DNA of 64,000 nucleotides from Blastocladiella emersonii ATCC 22665 (GCA_025594325.1 JANHCV010000009.1:186001-250000); one strand, 5' to 3'; counted from the first letter of the stretch, positions 57,876-64,000 are shown. Notes: generated from the sequence alone by a model not told the origin. Numbers and translations are program-made.

Positions 57876-60176
57876 TTAATCGCGGTTTGCCACCAGCTTG
57901 GAAGCGGCACGACGAATTTCGCGAACTAATGCACACGCAACGTCGCCGCCGTTCCGCGTTGCCACGTCGACAGCTTGCTCGATCCAGTCCGCGTCTTTGA
58001 CACCTTCGAGCGCTCCTGTGGAGACAGCACGCCAGAAGCTGAGCGGGAGGGAAGTGTCGAAATCGACAGCATCGCCGAGTACGTCAAGCATGGCGGCCAG
58101 GCCGGCGCGGATCAGGAGCTGTACAAGGTTGCGGAGCGGATACGCCACGGTTTCGCACGCTGAGAGGCACCGAAGGATGCCACGTTTGTTGGTGCGCGTC
58201 GGCCAAGTGCGCAGTTTCGCAAGGTTGTCAACCAAGAAGAGGGCTTTCACAAGCTCCTCGGCGACAACAAGAGGGATGCGTTGAATGCACAGCGGATCAA
58301 GAGCCACGAGATCGCGGATAGTGTTGAGCCACGCGCGCTGATCCGAGATTGAGCATTCGCCACAAGTCTTGCCAAGAGGCGAAGCGAGCGGGAAGACGTG
58401 ACGACCAGCGCGGTCGGAGACCTGCGCCCAGACCATGGCGCCAAAGAGCGAGTGGGCTGTGTCGCTCTCCTTGATCAAAGCGATAGCATCGTTGCGAGTC
58501 GAACGACCTTGAACGGCAGCAACAACGACCCATGCGAGCTCGGCGCAGATTGGGCTCGTCAAGCAAAGAATGGTCGCGTTTGCAAGAAGAAACACGTCCC
58601 ACAGTTCCGTCGAGGGCTCGCTTGCAAACACGGCGGTCATAATCTTGCACGAGCTGGGGTTGAGAGAAGAGAGACCACCACCGTCATCACGCTGCAGAAC
58701 CGTTTCACGCAAGACCAAGGCAAGCTCGTGGCAAAGTCTCAGCGCCATTTCAGAGCGGTGCTGGCGCACAAACGCAAGAACGTCCCGCGGCCCACATTGA
58801 TCCAAGGCGAGATCGAGCGATGCACGGAAAGCTACACGCGTTATTGAGCGAGATCAGTCGACATTCGTTGTTTGTACCCGACGAGGAGAAAAGAGAAGAC
58901 CGCACCCCGCAGCACAGTGCGTTGAAAGGAATCACCAAGGAGTTGTGCGGACGTGACAGCAAGAGGACTGGCGGGCCCGCCGTCCGGTTTGCTCATCGCG
59001 TATCGAACAACAAAGCACCAGTCCGAGTCGTCGAGCAAGTTGTTATCATGAAGCAGGGTCAGGACCTCGCTGTTGATTGCAAACGGACGACCACCGAGCT
59101 TGCTGCTGAAGAGACCGCGGTCACCTTCCACGGTCGAACTATCCGTGTCATGAAGCAGCCTCGCTAATTGATGTAAAGCCGCTGGCACACGGACGAGATG
59201 GGTAATGAGGTGCACATTTTCGTAAAGCGGCGGCGAAGCCGTCCACGCCTCGTAAATAAGCCACTGGAGCATCTGCGCAGCTTGTTCAGTGAGATCGGGG
59301 TCATCTTGCGCGTCCCCAGGGAGACTCATCAAAAAGCGGGTGGAGAGTAACTTGTCTTTAAAGAAGCGAGCGGGCCAATGAGACTCGAGAGCAGATGCGG
59401 AAGCGGTAGTCAAAATGGAAAGTATTTCGACGTCCAGACAAAATACGGCAAAGACGCCCAAAAAATCAAGAAATCGCATTGGTTGCTCGGTCTTTTTCGC
59501 CGCCCAGGGCTCCACGTACTCAATAAGCACTTCGTAGAGGTCATAGTGCGATAGTATAAACCAAGTATGGACTGGCAGACGAATGGAAAAGACGTCGGGG
59601 AGTCGCTGGTGCGTCTTATCAAGTAGCCAAGTGAGGTTTTCCGGTTTCAGACGCACGGCAGCGAGGGTTAAGAGCTGACAGAGCGCTTCCACAGGAGAGT
59701 CCTTGCACTGGTGAGTATGGTCGGAACGAATCGAGTCCCCAAGTGCCGTAGTCTGCGTTTCTGGACTGGTACCGAGCGAGCGCAAGGCCAGCGATGCAAG
59801 CGGAAGAATGTGTTCAAAAAGCGCTGAAAAGAGCGACCGGAGAACTGCAGAAGCAGAACCACTGTCACCGTCGTGGCTGGGCAAGGTAGAGTAGCAGTAC
59901 TCGAGAAGCGCACCGCTATCCGACAGGAGAACGGAATCGCCAGCCTCGTATTCTTTCAGCCAGCCCGCAGGAGGGCCGTGGGGCAAGCAAGTGTCGGATC
60001 CATACGCCTTTGACGGGGGCGCTGTGTGAAAGGAAGTGAAGCTCGCGGGTCGCTGCACAGATAGCCAATTGGGGCTGGGCGAGCTGGAGCGCAAAAGTCA
60101 ACAGCTCGACGGGGAGCATGGCCAAAGTAGGGCGCTCGTTCGGTTGCAGCAAGTTTCTTTCATTCGCTTCGTTCAT
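57876..60176 (-). CDS. Family A paralog A5; a single +1 frameshift at 59980-83 (error or recent lesion)
   Basis: LAMLPVELLTFALQLAQP start; intron 58832..58905; C-terminal CGEC and FWRAVSTGALEGVKD. Confidence 0.7.
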
Positions 60177-60376
60177 GGTTGTTGCGGGCGAGAGCGAGAA
60201 GCTGAGGTGTTTCGATCGAGGCCAAGAGTTGATCGCTCGGGCGACATCACATCAACATCACGCGAGTGGCGCATCGCGGCGGATTCTTCACCACATTCCC
60301 CGACCCTCACTTTGTGGCAGCTCAAACTGTGATCCATTAAATCATACTCTCTGCGTGACCGCACAACTCACAGCGA

Positions 60377-61325
60377 CTACTCCTCGACCGCGCGCTTCTG
60401 CGCCTCGCCGCCAGCGGCCACGTCGCGCAGCTGCTTGGCGCCGCGGCCGAGCCGAAGCTCGCCCTTGTCCGTCTCGGGCGGCTGCCACGCCTTCTTCTCG
60501 TCGGAACCGACCTGCTGCCCGCCGCGGTGCATCGGGGCCGGGCCATGCGGGACCGCGCCGCGGCCAGCGCCAACCGTCGCGGTGCCGTGCGGGTCGGTCG
60601 CGTAGTGCGGGTGGCGCGCCTGCTTGCGGGCGGCGAGGATCTCGCGCAGGACGGCGTGAGCGCGACCCGCCGCGGCGGCGCACGCCTGGCAGTGCGCGTG
60701 CTCCGTGTGGCTGCCGCAGTGCGCGTGCACGCGCTCGGCCGACGACAGGACGAGCGCCAGGACGCCCGAGTAGTCGAGCGCGTCCGTGGCCAGGTGGTGC
60801 GCGCGGTCGCCGAGGTCCGACGGCGGCGCCATGGACTCGCCGGCCGGCGGCGGCGACGAGGTGACGGCGTGCTGGTGGATGCCAAGCGACTCGGAGCCCG
60901 CCGACACGAGGAGCCACGCGGCCTGGTGCGCGAGGTCTATGCAGCACGGCGGACGAGTTAGCGTCGTGTGGGCAGCGATTGAGTGAGGGAGAGGGAGCGT
61001 ACCGGCGTAGGTGCGGCAGCACTTGTAGCAGTCGACGCCCGCGCGCTCGGCTTTCTCGGCGCAGTACTTGGACAGCAGCGCCGACTCGTTGCTAAGCGGG
61101 AGAGCGCGCGGGTGCGTGCGTCAGCGCAGGCTCGCCGGGCGCAGGGTGAAGCGAGCGAGAGACGTACAGGATCATGGCCGCATCGAGATCCTACACACGA
61201 GCGACGAGCGACGCGTGAGTTAGCGATGGCCGCCGTGGCGATGACGAGGGCGCGGCGGGGAGACGCACCGCGTCGAGGATCTTGGAGAACGGCTGCTGCT
61301 CCTGCTCGGTGGTTGGCATCGACAT
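60377..61325 (-). CDS. Csp3/YhjQ (DUF326)-like four-helix-bundle protein, 242 aa; join(complement 61269..61325,61168..61190,61003..61091,60377..60936)
   Basis: Three canonical introns give 729 nt in frame. HCGSHTEHAHCQACAAA matches the ECGKH-DHDHCQACAKA-type motif of Csp3. Confidence 0.7.
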
Positions 61326-61514
61326 GGTGTGGTGTTTCGTTCCGTGGCGTGCCGTGGCGACGGTGGAGGAGAGCGGAAGGGCGGCGAGGAGGGGAGGCCG
61401 TGAAGGAAGGAGGGCCGACCCACCGAACGGCCGAGCGCCGAACGCGAAACGCGTCGGTCATCAGCGCGAGACCGAGACCGTGAGCAAAACTTCGCTATAT
61501 TCTTCACTCCACCA

Positions 61515-64000
61515 CTACGCGTCGGGCACGGGCGGCAGCACGACGCCGTCGACGCCGAGCATCGCGTACAGCTCGTCGCGGTGCGCCTTGACGTCTGCGA
61601 TGGGCAGAGTCCAGTCGACCTCGGTCAGGAGCGTCGTGACGCGGTCCACATCCCGCACCCCCGCATCACCGCCATCATCCTCGCACGCCTGCGCGTAGAT
61701 GGGCGCGCACGCGAGCAGCGTCTCGGCGGCGCCCTTGCGGACGCGCGGGTAGACGTGGCACGTCTGCTGCGCGAGGTACCGCGCCGCGCACGTCCGGGTC
61801 TCGCGGTGGGGCACGCCGGCGAGCCCGCCGAGCACCTTGAACGCGGCGAGAATCTTGTTCACGTCCTTGACCTTGGCGATCTCGCGGCGCACCGCGGCGT
61901 AGACGCCCGCGTGAAACGCGTCGGGCGCGTACAGGACCGACTGGTTCGCGTACAAAATATCGAGCGCGGTGAGGACGGGGAGAACGACGCGGTCCACGCG
62001 GTAGTTGGACGTCAGGGTCGCGAGAATGGCGTCGGTCGCCGCGGCGAGGGCAGCGTCGTCGTCCGCCAGCCCCTCGAGGTGGTCCATGAGCACCTGCCCC
62101 GCGGCCTTGACCAGCGACTCGGTCATGCCGCCCATGCACAGGAGGTACCCGAGGACCGCCGTCTCGCGGTAGAAGGGCTCGGCGAGGACGGGCGCGACGG
62201 CCGCGAGGACGCTGGCCGAGTTGGACCAGTCGAGCGACGGGCCGCCCGCAGCGGGCGCGACAACGCGCTGCAGCACGTCCACGGCCGGGATGTGCCCGGC
62301 AGCCTGCTGTGCCGCGAGCAGCCGCGCGAGGACGGGGCCCGCGACCTCGCGCACGCGGTCGATCTTGGACAGCGTCTGGTGGACGACGCCGCGCGCGATC
62401 GCGGGGACCACGGCCGCAGGATCCGCGAGCACCGCGTGCTCGACGACGAGCGCGAGCCCGGCCATGGCCTCCATGCGGACCCACGACCCGACGTCGCCGT
62501 GCGAGGTGGTCGTGTAGTCGTCGAGCGCACCCAAAAACGCGGCCACGATGCGCGCGACGGTCGCGGGCGGGAGCGCGGCGCCGTGCTGGACGACGTGTTT
62601 CCCGACAGCCTGCAGCGCGTTCTTCTTGGCCTCGGCGTCGATTTGGGGTTTCGCGAGGTTTTCGGTGGACGCGATCAGCGCCTCGACCGTCTGCACGCTG
62701 AGGTCGAGCGGCATCGCGACTTCGCCCAACGCGAGCGCGTACCCGCGGCGCGCGACCTGGTCGCCCGACGGCCGCGCGGCGTGGACCCACCACCCGACGA
62801 CGGCGGCGAGGCGCGCGGGGGAGACGCGGCGCAGGGCGGCGGCGGCCGTAGCCGCCGCTGCCTCCTGCAGGGGTACCTCCTTGCGCTCGACCGACGACTC
62901 GATGAGCGGGATGAGCAGGTCGATGGTGGCCTCGGGGACGGCGCACACGGTGGCGAGCGCGGCGACCAGCTTGAGCGCGCCCTGGCGCGTCAGCTCGGAC
63001 CCGAACGTCTGCAGGAACGCGGGCGCGATGGCGCGGAGCTGCGCGACGGCCGCGTCGGCGTGCGCGAGGGTAACCACCCCCGAACCGGCGGCGAGGATCA
63101 CCTCGGCGAGCGCGACGGCGGACCCGTGCCTCGTGCCGAGCTCGGTGCTGGTAATGGTCGGGAGGAGCGTGTCAAAGAGGTGCTGGAAGATATCGGGCTT
63201 GAGGTCCACAAGGACCCCCAACGCCTCGGCGGCGAGCACGCGCACGGCGGGGTCCCAGTGGAACACGCTGTTCTCGAGCAGGTACCGGACGCAGTACGGG
63301 TGGTACTCGTCGAACGCGGCGATGGCGCGGCCGGCGACGAGGAACGCGGACGCGCGGTTGCCGACGGTAAAGAAATCGGCCGCCGTCACGATATCGATGC
63401 CGTGCGGGAAGATCCCCTGGCGGCCGACATTCTCCTGGAACGCGGCCGAGGCCGCGCGGCGCACGTGCACCTCGCGGTCGTACATGGACACGCACACGAG
63501 CGACGGCGCGAGCCGGTGGACGTGCGGGCGCATGATATCCGGTGCATACGCGCGCGCAAACGACCAGCACACGTAGCAGGCGGCGTCGCGCACGGGGCTG
63601 CCGATCGAGTAGTTGCCGCGGCGAATGTCAAAGGTGAGGGCGAGCTGGATCCACGTCATGGCCGTGTCGAGGACCGCGGGCAGCAGCAGGCCGCGGCGCG
63701 CGAGCTCGGCGATCGACAGGCACGCGCCGTGCCACGTGTGCTCGGACACGCCCGAGATGTCGAGACTGTCCCCCGAAATCGAGGCGTGCACGTTCTCGTT
63801 GAACAAGTCAATGACCGACTGGACCACGTCGGCGGCGAGCTCCTCGGGCAGGCGGTACGTGATGCGGCCGACGCCCTTGGCGGCGGACCACCGCACGATG
63901 GTGTCGCGGTCGCGCAGCCCGGCGAGGACGACGTGCAGGACCTCCTCGATCTGCTCGGGGATCTCGTCATCTTCCTCCTCGTCCTCGTCGTGACGGGACG
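61515..64000 (-). CDS. TBCD: Tubulin-specific chaperone D (tubulin-folding cofactor D), 5' partial
   Basis: RWSAAKGVGRIT, WHGACLSIAELARRGLL, VRDAACYVCWSFARAY, RRAASAAFQENVGR and GDVGSWVR. Confidence 0.95.
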   Translation of the reverse strand, partial: SRHDEDEEEDDEIPEQIEEVLHVVLAGLRDRDTIVRWSAAKGVGRITYRLPEELAADVVQSVIDLFNENVHASISGDSLDISGVSEHTWHGACLSIAELARRGLLLPAVLDTAMTWIQLALTFDIRRGNYSIGSPVRDAACYVCWSFARAYAPDIMRPHVHRLAPSLVCVSMYDREVHVRRAASAAFQENVGRQGIFPHGIDIVTAADFFTVGNRASAFLVAGRAIAAFDEYHPYCVRYLLENSVFHWDPAVRVLAAEALGVLVDLKPDIFQHLFDTLLPTITSTELGTRHGSAVALAEVILAAGSGVVTLAHADAAVAQLRAIAPAFLQTFGSELTRQGALKLVAALATVCAVPEATIDLLIPLIESSVERKEVPLQEAAAATAAAALRRVSPARLAAVVGWWVHAARPSGDQVARRGYALALGEVAMPLDLSVQTVEALIASTENLAKPQIDAEAKKNALQAVGKHVVQHGAALPPATVARIVAAFLGALDDYTTTSHGDVGSWVRMEAMAGLALVVEHAVLADPAAVVPAIARGVVHQTLSKIDRVREVAGPVLARLLAAQQAAGHIPAVDVLQRVVAPAAGGPSLDWSNSASVLAAVAPVLAEPFYRETAVLGYLLCMGGMTESLVKAAGQVLMDHLEGLADDDAALAAATDAILATLTSNYRVDRVVLPVLTALDILYANQSVLYAPDAFHAGVYAAVRREIAKVKDVNKILAAFKVLGGLAGVPHRETRTCAARYLAQQTCHVYPRVRKGAAETLLACAPIYAQACEDDGGDAGVRDVDRVTTLLTEVDWTLPIADVKAHRDELYAMLGVDGVVLPPVPDA

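What the first reader, a model, noticed from the sequence alone, without database searches (positions are those of the whole stretch)
60377..61325. Intron-containing fungal homolog of bacterial copper-storage proteins (Csp3/DUF326) that has lost most core cysteines
Seen: the spliced protein contains ...LNESALLSKYCAEKAERAGVDCYKCCRTYADLAHQAAWLL...DYSGVLALVLSSAERVHAHCGSHTEHAHCQACAAAAGRAHAVLRE. Known: bacterial Csp3/YhjQ proteins are four-helix bundles lined by CxxxC/CxxC motifs that store Cu(I), with a His-rich loop of the form ECGKH..HCQACA. By eye, helices 2-4 align gap-free (AL...E...CG.H...HCQACA), but most core Cys are replaced by A/V/L/S. A ~45-aa insert and an ~75-aa tail have been added. 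Inference: an old horizontal acquisition, since domesticated (3 introns, host-like codons). It may keep only the His/Cys 'mouth' as a small metal site or sensor rather than a bulk Cu store. The ORF track misses the gene as a unit.
Basis: partly seen in the sequence, partly recalled or inferred. Interest (0 to 1): 0.75.

Follow-up and report, generated by a model that had tools for sequence, protein, structure and literature searches.

The report
Cysteine-depleted fungal copper-storage-protein relative
A small intron-containing gene of the water mould-like fungus Blastocladiella emersonii encodes a four-helix protein that looks like a stripped-down relative of bacterial copper-storage proteins: it keeps only the cysteine/histidine cluster at the open end of the bundle, so it probably binds a few metal ions instead of storing many.

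Summary
On the minus strand, 61325..60377, lies a four-exon gene with three GT..AG introns. Its product is identical to an annotated 242-aa hypothetical protein of Blastocladiella emersonii ATCC 22665.

Sequence searches found relatives only in Blastocladiomycota (Allomyces, Catenaria). Two intron positions are shared with Allomyces, so the gene is old and resident.

Pfam, NCBIfam and PDB sequence searches give no significant Csp hit. The profile-profile score against classical Csp3 (94.9 %) comes almost entirely from one 14-residue motif. Other evidence agrees, however:
- Two AlphaFold models were searched without sequence against 48,161 PDB chains.
- The motif sits exactly at the alpha3-loop-alpha4 turn, as in Csp3.
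- The N-terminal half aligns in the expected register.

By alignment, 14 of 19 core cysteines are replaced by Ser/Ala/Val/Leu/Tyr. The five mouth cysteines and three mouth histidines remain, and a new invariant Cys occupies the Asn58/Asp42 ligand position.

Best reading: a Csp3-derived, low-capacity metal site, probably Cu(I). Horizontal origin is plausible but not shown. This is a new variant of a known kind. The scan had already noted a paralogous copy of this gene (s1-256288).

The parts
61269..61325 (-). Exon 1 (codons 1-19, ATG at 61325-61323)
   Evidence: Read by hand. Translation. Present at the start of P0001. N-terminus is alignable with Allomyces and Catenaria.
61191..61268 (-). Intron 1 (78 nt, GTGCGT..TAG, phase 0)
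   Evidence: Absent in Allomyces. It is the only part of the gene that differs notably between the B. emersonii copies (14 of 78 columns).
61168..61190 (-). Exon 2 (23 nt, codons 20 to part of 27)
61092..61167 (-). Intron 2 (76 nt, GTACGT..TAG, phase 2 in codon 27)
   Evidence: The Allomyces gene has an intron in the same aligned codon and phase (codon 23).
61003..61091 (-). Exon 3 (89 nt): end of helix 1, the 1-2 loop and start of helix 2. Carries Cys37, Cys48, Cys51 and Cys52 (61016-61063).
   Evidence: The Allomyces exon is also 89 nt. Cys37, Cys48 and Cys52 are invariant in the family. Cys37 and Cys48 align with BsCsp3 Cys22 and Cys38; Cys52 aligns with Asp42 (Mt Asn58).
60937..61002 (-). 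Intron 3 (66 nt, GTACGC..TAG, phase 1 in codon 57)
   Evidence: The Allomyces gene has an intron in the same aligned codon and phase (codon 53).
60377..60936 (-). Exon 4 (codons 57-242 plus stop TAG)
60776..60904 (-). Variable insert in the helix 2-helix 3 connection (about residues 68-110), at the closed end of the bundle
   Evidence: Low pLDDT in both models. Forms a gap against all Csp3. Length and sequence vary between genera.
60677..60718 (-). Alpha3-loop-alpha4 mouth motif, Cys130 to Ala143 (C-G-x-H-x-x-H-x-H-C-Q-A-C-A)
   Evidence: Matches BsCsp3 Cys81, His84, His86, His88, Cys89 and Cys92. Lies at the predicted helix 3/helix 4 turn.
60380..60613 (-). C-terminal tail (residues 165-242): His/Pro/Gly-rich, predicted disordered, with a terminal helix at 221-241
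   Evidence: Not conserved in length: Allomyces has about 30 aa, Catenaria about 250 aa.

Best explanation
The gene encodes a cytosolic four-helix-bundle protein descended from a classical bacterial-type copper storage protein (Csp3, Pfam PF03860).

In classical Csp3, 18-19 cysteines line the bundle core and hold about 18-20 Cu(I) ions. Three histidines and five cysteines form the sites at the open 'mouth'. In this blastoclad family, 14 of the 19 core cysteine positions have become Ser, Ala, Val, Leu or Tyr, so the core is an ordinary packed one.

The mouth set is kept. In BsCsp3 numbering, Cys22, Cys38, Cys81, His84, His86, His88, Cys89 and Cys92 correspond to Cys37, Cys48, Cys130, His133, His136, His138, Cys139 and Cys142 here. 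The position of the gatekeeper ligand Asn58 (MtCsp3) / Asp42 (BsCsp3) has become an invariant Cys (Cys52).

All of these residues lie within seven residues of the 1-2 or 3-4 turns, that is, at one end of the bundle. The insert and the tail are at the other end.

I infer that the protein binds a small cluster of thiophilic metal ions there, most likely a few Cu(I), rather than storing bulk copper. It would then act as a low-capacity buffer, chaperone or sensor.

Shown: the gene model, its conservation, the fold prediction and the residue mapping. Inferred: homology (about 0.85), metal binding and the metal's identity, and horizontal origin.
For: Gene and family
- P0001 is identical to the spliced model.
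- Relatives were found only in Blastocladiomycota. These are Allomyces macrogynus (two), A. arbusculus, A. javanicus and Catenaria anguillulae, plus three B. emersonii loci.
- Two intron positions and phases and an 89-nt exon are shared with Allomyces.
- GC3 is host-like.

Fold
- The single-sequence AF2 model of P0001 has four long helices with pLDDT about 90.
- A sequence-free VIA search ranks SlCsp3 6q6b first: Z 14.1, rmsd 1.6 over 111 residues, 22 % identity. Csp1 5fjd, RkCsp3 6zif, BsCsp3 5fig and PA2107 3kav are also in the top 7 of 48,161 chains.
- An independent model of the Allomyces protein has helices at pLDDT 95-98. Csp-family chains take ranks 1-6 with Z 16.4-13.9, and the next unrelated chain scores 12.6.
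- The Foldseek top 15 for that model are all Csp3, with TM up to 0.83.

Sequence
- The only PDB hit of residues 96-170 is BsCsp3.
- BLASTP of Allomyces against B. subtilis Csp3 gives 33.9 bits, E 1e-7; P0001 gives 24.3 bits, E 4e-4.
- An HMM of 92 classical Csp3 scores Allomyces at 32.3 bits. Among 935 window ORFs it picks out only this gene.
- hhalign gives 94.9 %, E 4.7e-8, spanning the insert.
- With the motif removed, the N-terminal half still aligns in the expected register: P 0.008, reached by 1 of 200 shuffles.
- MAFFT of blastoclad plus Csp3 sequences gives the same register. Cys37, Cys48, Cys130, His133, His138, Cys139, Gln140 and Cys142 are invariant across all ten sequences.
- Language-model features put PF03860 clusters first.

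Ligand roles come from PMC5171941 and PMC10155185.
Against: - Pfam PF03860, NCBIfam and PDB sequence or profile searches give no significant Csp hit.
- The hhalign score is essentially the motif. Keeping residues 130-143 and shuffling the rest gives a mean of 47.8 against 49.3 observed.
- Chance bacterial ORFs carrying the 8-residue motif score up to 17 bits on my Csp3 HMM, about the same as P0001's 18.
- That Csp3 profile was built from sequences selected for the motif.
- Four-helix bundles are common, and Z values of 12-13 occur for unrelated bundles.
- The first His is Asn in two Allomyces paralogues, and the middle His is Cys in Catenaria.
- There is no expression data and no metal-binding data.
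- I could not read model coordinates to check ligand geometry.
Confidence: 0.6

Rival explanations
1. Unrelated, lineage-specific four-helix bundle. On this reading the 14-residue Cys/His motif resembles the Csp3 mouth by convergence or chance, and the structural matches reflect only the generic up-down bundle.
For: - No significant Pfam, PDB or NCBIfam sequence hit.
- The hhalign score is motif-driven.
- Chance ORFs with the motif exist in bacterial genomes.
- Unrelated bundles reach Z 12-13.
Against: - The motif sits exactly at the helix 3/helix 4 turn of a bundle with Csp topology.
- Every Csp-family representative outranks the unrelated bundles for the better model, with rmsd 1.6-2.5 over nearly the whole target.
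- The N-terminal half aligns in register independently of the motif.
- Former Cys positions are invariant Ser or Ala, and the remaining invariant Cys are the known mouth ligands.
Confidence: 0.12
2. A true Csp3 descendant that no longer binds metal. The clustered cysteines would instead act as a thiol/disulfide redox switch or as structural disulfides, or the protein would serve only as a scaffold.
For: - In apo-BsCsp3 crystals, Cys38 and Cys81 partly form a disulfide (PMC5171941). These are the equivalents of Cys48 and Cys130.
- The first and middle His are not strictly invariant.
Against: - Three His next to the Cys, plus the gain of a Cys at the Asn58/Asp42 ligand position, argue for a coordination site rather than a disulfide pair.
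- The protein has no signal peptide, so it is probably in the reducing cytosol (sequence).
Confidence: 0.13
3. A true Csp3 descendant whose mouth site now binds a different cofactor, such as Zn(II), Cd(II) or an iron-sulfur cluster, with a role unrelated to copper.
For: - Six invariant Cys plus His at one end of a bundle could hold Zn or an Fe-S cluster.
- The B. emersonii tail is His-rich.
- DUF326 proteins have been discussed as cadmium binders in one paper listed; I did not read it.
Against: Every characterised family member binds Cu(I), and the retained residues are exactly the Cu(I) ligands of sites Cu13, Cu18 and Cu19 in MtCsp3.
Confidence: 0.12

Closest known systems
Classical cytosolic copper storage proteins, Csp3 (BsCsp3/YhjQ 5FIG/6WKT, MtCsp3 5ARM/5NQM, SlCsp3 'Ccsp' 6EI0/6Q6B; Pfam PF03860)
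   Same: - Predicted four-helix bundle of the same topology. These are the best structural matches: Z 14-16, rmsd 1.6-2.0 over 99-111 residues.
- The same alpha3-loop-alpha4 motif with three His.
- The same mouth cysteines (Bs Cys22, 38, 81, 89, 92).
- No signal peptide.
   Different: - 14 of the 19 core Cys positions are Ser/Ala/Val/Leu/Tyr, so the three tetranuclear core clusters cannot form.
- Cys replaces Asn58/Asp42.
- A roughly 40-aa disordered insert sits in the 2-3 connection, and the C-terminal tail varies (30-250 aa).
- The host is eukaryotic and the gene has introns.
- It scores below every Pfam or HMMER threshold.
Non-classical Csp3 subgroup (RkCsp3, 6ZIF; PMC10155185)
   Same: A natural Csp3 variant in which one of the two regions (mouth or core) has been remodelled. 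The fold is the same (Z 11.8 and 14.5).
   Different: It is the reciprocal case. RkCsp3 keeps the Cys-lined core, loses Cys38/54/111 and the His motif, and has Met at the Asn58 position. The blastoclad proteins keep exactly those mouth residues and lose the core.
Exported Csp1 (MtCsp1, 5FJD)
   Same: Same fold (Z 11.8 and 14.8).
   Different: Csp1 is Tat-exported and has 13 core Cys. Its mouth uses Met and a single His, without the His-x-His-Cys motif.
Eukaryotic metallothioneins and Atx1-type copper chaperones
   Same: Cytosolic Cys-based Cu(I) handling in eukaryotes. The small number of predicted sites resembles a chaperone or buffer.
   Different: No sequence or fold relationship. Metallothioneins are unstructured without metal, and Atx1 has a ferredoxin-like fold with a single CxxC site.

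Membership tests
Csp / PF03860 (copper storage proteins) | Match to the Pfam PF03860 model at or above its gathering score | tested here: not met
   hmmscan at E up to 10 gave no PF03860 hit. This was so for P0001, for its parts, for the exon translations, and for the Allomyces and Catenaria proteins. All 119 bacterial and archaeal hits carry PF03860.
Csp / PF03860 (copper storage proteins) | Up-down four-helix bundle monomer superposable on solved Csps | tested here: met
   On predicted models only. Csp chains are the best matches in two independent models: Z 14.1 and 16.4, rmsd 1.6-2.0, covering 99-111 of 100-118 target residues. The Foldseek top 15 are all Csp3.
Csp / PF03860 (copper storage proteins) | Core lined by many Cys (13-21) in CxxxC/CxxC register pointing into the bundle | tested here: not met
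   P0001 has 7 Cys, of which 6 are family-invariant. By alignment, 14 of the 19 BsCsp3 Cys positions are Ser/Ala/Val/Leu/Tyr.
Classical Csp3 subgroup | Alpha3-loop-alpha4 motif with three His next to Cys (Mt His104/108/110-Cys111; Bs His84/86/88-Cys89) | tested here: met
   The motif Cys130-x-x-His133-x-x-His136-x-His138-Cys139-Gln-Ala-Cys142 lies at the predicted helix 3/4 turn. The first His is Asn in two Allomyces paralogues and the middle His is Cys in Catenaria.
Classical Csp3 subgroup | Mouth cysteines Cys38, Cys54 and Cys111 (MtCsp3 numbering), which are absent from non-classical Csp3 | tested here: met
   By alignment only. Cys37, Cys48 and Cys139 align with Bs Cys22, Cys38 and Cys89, which correspond to Mt Cys38, Cys54 and Cys111. 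hhalign and MAFFT give the same register, and the paper supplies the numbering offsets.
Csp / PF03860 (copper storage proteins) | Homotetramer of bundles | not testable with these tools
   No multimer prediction was available.
Csp / PF03860 (copper storage proteins) | High-capacity, high-affinity Cu(I) binding (about 18-20 Cu(I) per monomer for Csp3) | not testable with these tools
   Needs protein chemistry. The sequence predicts a much lower capacity.

The most novel reading that the evidence does not exclude
A bacterial Csp3 gene entered the ancestor of the Blastocladiomycota, acquired introns and was remodelled into a 'mouth-only' protein. It would be the first eukaryotic Csp descendant, and a natural experiment showing that the His/Cys mouth of Csp3 works as an autonomous few-atom Cu(I) site (chaperone, buffer or sensor) without the storage core. 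It is kept in three concerted copies in B. emersonii.
Probability: 0.4. Interest if true: 0.7.

Novelty: new variant of a known kind. Interest (0 to 1): 0.6.

Why it matters
In the papers I could search, Csps are described as a bacterial solution to cytosolic copper storage, while eukaryotes are said to rely on metallothioneins (PMC5171941, PMC10155185).

A conserved eukaryotic descendant that has dropped the storage core but kept the mouth ligands would extend the family to fungi. It would also be the natural reciprocal of the non-classical RkCsp3 subgroup, which keeps the core and loses the mouth. That makes a direct question testable: what does the conserved His/Cys mouth do on its own?

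It would also put a name on a set of 'hypothetical proteins' that no family model currently recognises.

Tried and rejected
Searches that found nothing useful
- Pfam, NCBIfam and PDB phmmer/hmmsearch on exons, the whole protein, parts and the family profile gave no Csp hit. The one exception was BsCsp3 at E 7.5.
- The Atlas feature search with P0001 gave no usable hit.
- The Atlas shape search with the full-length model was uninformative, because the disordered tail was included.
- The search for related loci in bacterial and archaeal genomes with P0001 found no relative.
- The look-up of sequencing runs listed no RNA run.

Searches that did not answer the question asked
- The last word search used a mixed blastoclad+Csp3 profile, in the hope of finding other eukaryotic or intermediate members. 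It was flooded by bacterial Csp3, and the top 120 hits showed no other eukaryote. This does not show that such members are absent.
- Donor lineage: the family HMM scores Paenibacillus Csp3 highest, but only about 20 bits and motif-driven. I built no tree because the alignable signal is too short.

Ideas rejected
- 'Not a real gene': rejected because the protein is conserved in three genera and intron positions are shared.
- Bacterial contamination: rejected because of the introns, the GC3 and the position on a 1.74-Mb contig next to TBCD.

Full report
**What is in the sequence**

Reading the reverse complement of 60300-61520 gives a four-exon gene on the minus strand. The exons are 61325..61269, 61190..61168, 61091..61003 and 60936..60377, and the stop TAG is at 60379-60377. 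The three introns are 78, 76 and 66 nt. All are GT..AG and have CTAAC/CTGAC-like branch sites.

The word search with exon 4 returned one protein, P0001. It is 242 aa, 100 % identical over the whole exon, and named hypothetical protein H9P43_007107 of Blastocladiella emersonii ATCC 22665. Its sequence holds the four exon translations in order. A script that threads P0001 through genomic DNA recovers exons of 57/23/89/557 nt. The window copy is base-for-base identical to that locus. The annotation was made with funannotate (PMC9730499).

No RNA run was listed, so the splice model rests on comparative evidence, given below.

**Family and age**

An exhaustive phmmer search of 1.84 billion representatives found only two other proteins. 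One is from Allomyces macrogynus (P0002, 189 aa, 39 % identity). The other is from Catenaria anguillulae (P0003, 416 aa, 43 % over the core). A profile word search added a second A. macrogynus copy, A. arbusculus and A. javanicus. All are Blastocladiomycota, and all are 'hypothetical' without any Pfam domain.

The alignment runs without gaps across all three B. emersonii splice junctions. B. emersonii introns 2 and 3 lie in the same aligned codons and phases as the two Allomyces introns: codon 27/23 in phase 2 and codon 57/53 in phase 1. The 89-nt exon between them has the same length in both. Catenaria lacks these introns.

GC3 of the gene is 0.947, against 0.937 for the adjacent TBCD gene. 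The gene is therefore real, resident and at least as old as the Allomyces-Blastocladiella split.

**Is it related to Csp3? Sequence evidence**

Standard family tests fail. There is no Pfam PF03860, NCBIfam or significant PDB sequence hit for the exons, the whole protein, its parts, the orthologues or the family profile.

The only PDB chain reported for residues 96-170 is B. subtilis Csp3 (5fig_A). Its E-value of 7.5 is not significant, but the alignment is striking. It covers Cys81-Gly-x-His84-x-His86-x-His88-Cys89-Gln-Ala-Cys92-Ala.

To build a comparison set, I scanned bacterial and archaeal genomes for the DNA pattern encoding the 8-residue core of that motif. From the hits I extracted 92 distinct ORFs of 100-136 aa with 14-21 Cys. 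These are classical Csp3: the equivalents found all carry PF03860 and NCBI's name 'four-helix bundle copper-binding protein'.

Results against that set:
- An HMM of the 92 ORFs scores Allomyces at 32.3 bits, P0001 at 18.0 and Catenaria at 10.9.
- Among all 935 six-frame ORFs of the window, only this gene stands out: 16.3 bits against 8.1 for the next.
- hhalign of the blastoclad core against the set gives probability 94.9 %, E 4.7e-8 and score 49.3. It covers residues 28-148 against Csp3 14-99 and bridges the insert. Column shuffles give 11.3 +/- 2.5, with a maximum of 18.6.
- Pairwise BLASTP against B. subtilis Csp3 (P0014) gives E 1e-7 for Allomyces and 4e-4 for P0001.

**Controls that temper this**

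If residues 130-143 stay in place and everything else is shuffled, hhalign still scores 47.8 +/- 2.0. The profile-profile result is therefore the motif and little else.

Five bacterial ORFs that carry the 8-residue motif by chance score 8-17 bits on my Csp3 HMM, as much as P0001 does. My Csp3 set was also selected for the motif.

Signals that do not depend on the motif exist but are weaker:
- With the motif region cut from both sides, the N-terminal half still aligns in the expected register, residues 28-67 to Csp3 14-58. P is 0.008, and 1 of 200 shuffles reaches that score.
- A plain MAFFT alignment of three blastoclad and seven Csp3 sequences reproduces the same register. Cys37, Cys48, Cys130, His133, His138, Cys139, Gln140 and Cys142 are invariant in all ten sequences.
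- Protein-language-model features of the Allomyces core put PF03860 clusters first. The score of 0.82 makes this a lead only.

**Structure evidence**

A single-sequence AlphaFold model of P0001 gives four long helices (7-43, 48-82, 96-131, 137-164) with pLDDT around 90. The 83-95 loop and the tail are disordered.

A sequence-free alignment of this model against 48,161 PDB representatives gave these ranks:

| Rank | Chain | Z | Detail |
|---|---|---|---|
| 1 | S. lividans Csp3, 6q6b_B | 14.1 | rmsd 1.6 over 111 of 118 residues, 22 % identity |
| 4 | Csp1, 5fjd | 11.8 | |
| 5 | RkCsp3, 6zif | 11.8 | |
| 6 | BsCsp3, 5fig | 11.5 | 99 of 100 residues, 23 % identity |
| 7 | DUF326 protein PA2107, 3kav | 11.2 | |

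As a replicate, I modelled the Allomyces protein with the six-sequence family alignment. Its helices reach pLDDT 95-98. There the Csp-family chains take ranks 1-6 with Z 16.4, 15.5, 14.8, 14.5, 14.2 and 13.9, and the next, unrelated chain scores 12.6. The top 15 Foldseek hits are all Csp3, with probability 1.00 and TM up to 0.83 to Cu(I)-BsCsp3 6wkt.

Helical bundles give middling Z values easily. Even so, every Csp representative in the library outranks every other bundle for the better model. In both models the motif lies at the helix 3/helix 4 turn, exactly as in Csp3.

I put homology at about 0.85.

**Anatomy relative to Csp3**

I took BsCsp3 numbering from the B. stercoris orthologue (L004) and the chain numbering printed. 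The MtCsp3/BsCsp3 offsets come from PMC5171941.

Retained positions:

| BsCsp3 residue | P0001 residue |
|---|---|
| Cys22 | Cys37 |
| Cys38 | Cys48 |
| Cys81 | Cys130 |
| His84 | His133 |
| His86 | His136 |
| His88 | His138 |
| Cys89 | Cys139 |
| Cys92 | Cys142 |

Lost core cysteines:

| BsCsp3 residue | P0001 residue |
|---|---|
| Cys8 | Ala23 |
| Cys12 | Leu27 |
| Cys15 | Ser30 |
| Cys19 | Ser34 |
| Cys26 | Ala41 |
| Cys45 | Tyr55 |
| Cys49 | Ala59 |
| Cys67 | Leu116 |
| Cys70 | Val119 |
| Cys74 | Ala123 |
| Cys77 | Val126 |
| Cys96 | Ala146 |
| Cys99 | Ala149 |
| Cys103 | Leu153 |

Ser30, Ser34 and Ala59 are invariant within the family.

The retained set matches what PMC10155185 describes as the mouth of classical Csp3: three His plus five Cys, including Mt Cys38, Cys54 and Cys111. 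In MtCsp3, His110 and Cys111 bind Cu18. Cys54, Cys111 and His104 bind Cu19. Cys101, Cys114 and Asn58 bind Cu13.

The Asn58/Asp42 position is an invariant Cys in the blastoclad proteins (Cys52). The Cu13-like site would therefore be all-thiolate.

All the conserved ligands lie within seven residues of the 1-2 or 3-4 turns, which are at the same end of an up-down bundle. The variable insert (about residues 68-110) and the variable tail are at the opposite, closed end.

The family is thus the reciprocal of the non-classical RkCsp3 subgroup, which keeps the core and lacks exactly these mouth residues.

**Mechanism proposed**

I propose a cytosolic bundle with an ordinary hydrophobic core and one Cys6/His3 pocket at its open end. 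The pocket would bind a small Cu(I) cluster. This would give low-capacity buffering, delivery or sensing rather than bulk storage.

This is inference from the ligand mapping. Rivals are a redox or disulfide role, another metal, or no homology at all. Each is scored in the rival list.

**Origin**

In the papers read, Csps are described as bacterial. My genome scan also found them in haloarchaea. Within reach of phmmer, the blastoclad family has no relatives outside the phylum. The mixed-profile search showed only prokaryotes in its top 120 hits.

Horizontal acquisition before the Allomyces/Blastocladiella/Catenaria split is therefore plausible. I could not test whether other eukaryotes hold classical Csp3, and I could not name a donor.

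**Copies**

The window corresponds to JANHCV010000009.1 186001-250000.
- The copy studied here lies at 246377-247325.
- A second, identical copy lies at 337400-338348. It sits inside a 4.3-kb, 98 % identical duplication that includes the 3' part of TBCD.
- A third copy (P0004, Arg218Gln) lies at 373370-374314. It is the locus of the earlier scan note s1-256288.

Between the third copy and this one, 725 of 726 coding bases and introns 2 and 3 are identical. Intron 1 differs in 14 of 78 columns, and the flanks are only about 78 % identical by my estimate from the 88 % overall figure. That pattern fits gene conversion.

**Verdict**

The cautions are that full-length sequence statistics are not significant, and that horizontal origin and metal binding remain inferences. 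I rate it a new variant of a known kind, with interest 0.6.

Noticed in passing
window 60377-63900, with L121 and L122 (JANHCV010000009.1): The gene plus about 2.9 kb of the 3' part of the upstream TBCD gene is duplicated at 98 % identity, about 91 kb away on the same contig. There the full TBCD (1185 aa) precedes the copy. In the window, the TBCD part belongs to an annotated 1761-aa chimeric model (sugar transporter-BTB-TBCD C-terminus).
   Followed up: partly
L125:7720-9565 (JANHCV010000009.1 373370-374314 for the gene): The third copy (P0004, Arg218Gln) has 725/726 identical coding bases and identical introns 2 and 3. Intron 1 differs in 14 of 78 columns and the flanks are roughly 78 % identical. 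This looks like gene conversion keeping the copies the same.
   Followed up: partly
window 58841-60094 (-): The 417-aa ORF directly downstream has GC 0.55 and GC3 0.59, far below the 0.94 of the two neighbouring genes. It is either not a normal host gene or lies in a compositionally foreign stretch.
   Followed up: no
P0006, P0007 (Allomyces macrogynus second copy, A. javanicus); P0003 (Catenaria): The first mouth histidine is Asn in two Allomyces paralogues, and the middle histidine is Cys in Catenaria. Only His138-Cys139-Gln-x-Cys142 is strictly invariant.
   Followed up: no
L040, L041, L047, L054, L066: Five bacterial ORFs carry the 8-residue H-D-H-C-Q-A-C-A string without being Csp3 (3-10 Cys, no bundle-like sequence). 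They look like chance or out-of-frame matches and served as a motif-only control.
   Followed up: yes
L124:6001-7475 (Catenaria anguillulae): The Catenaria orthologue carries a roughly 250-aa Gln/His/Glu/Gly-rich low-complexity tail. Its four annotated introns have weak GTC donors and sit at positions not shared with the other genera, so the model downstream of the bundle may be unreliable.
   Followed up: no
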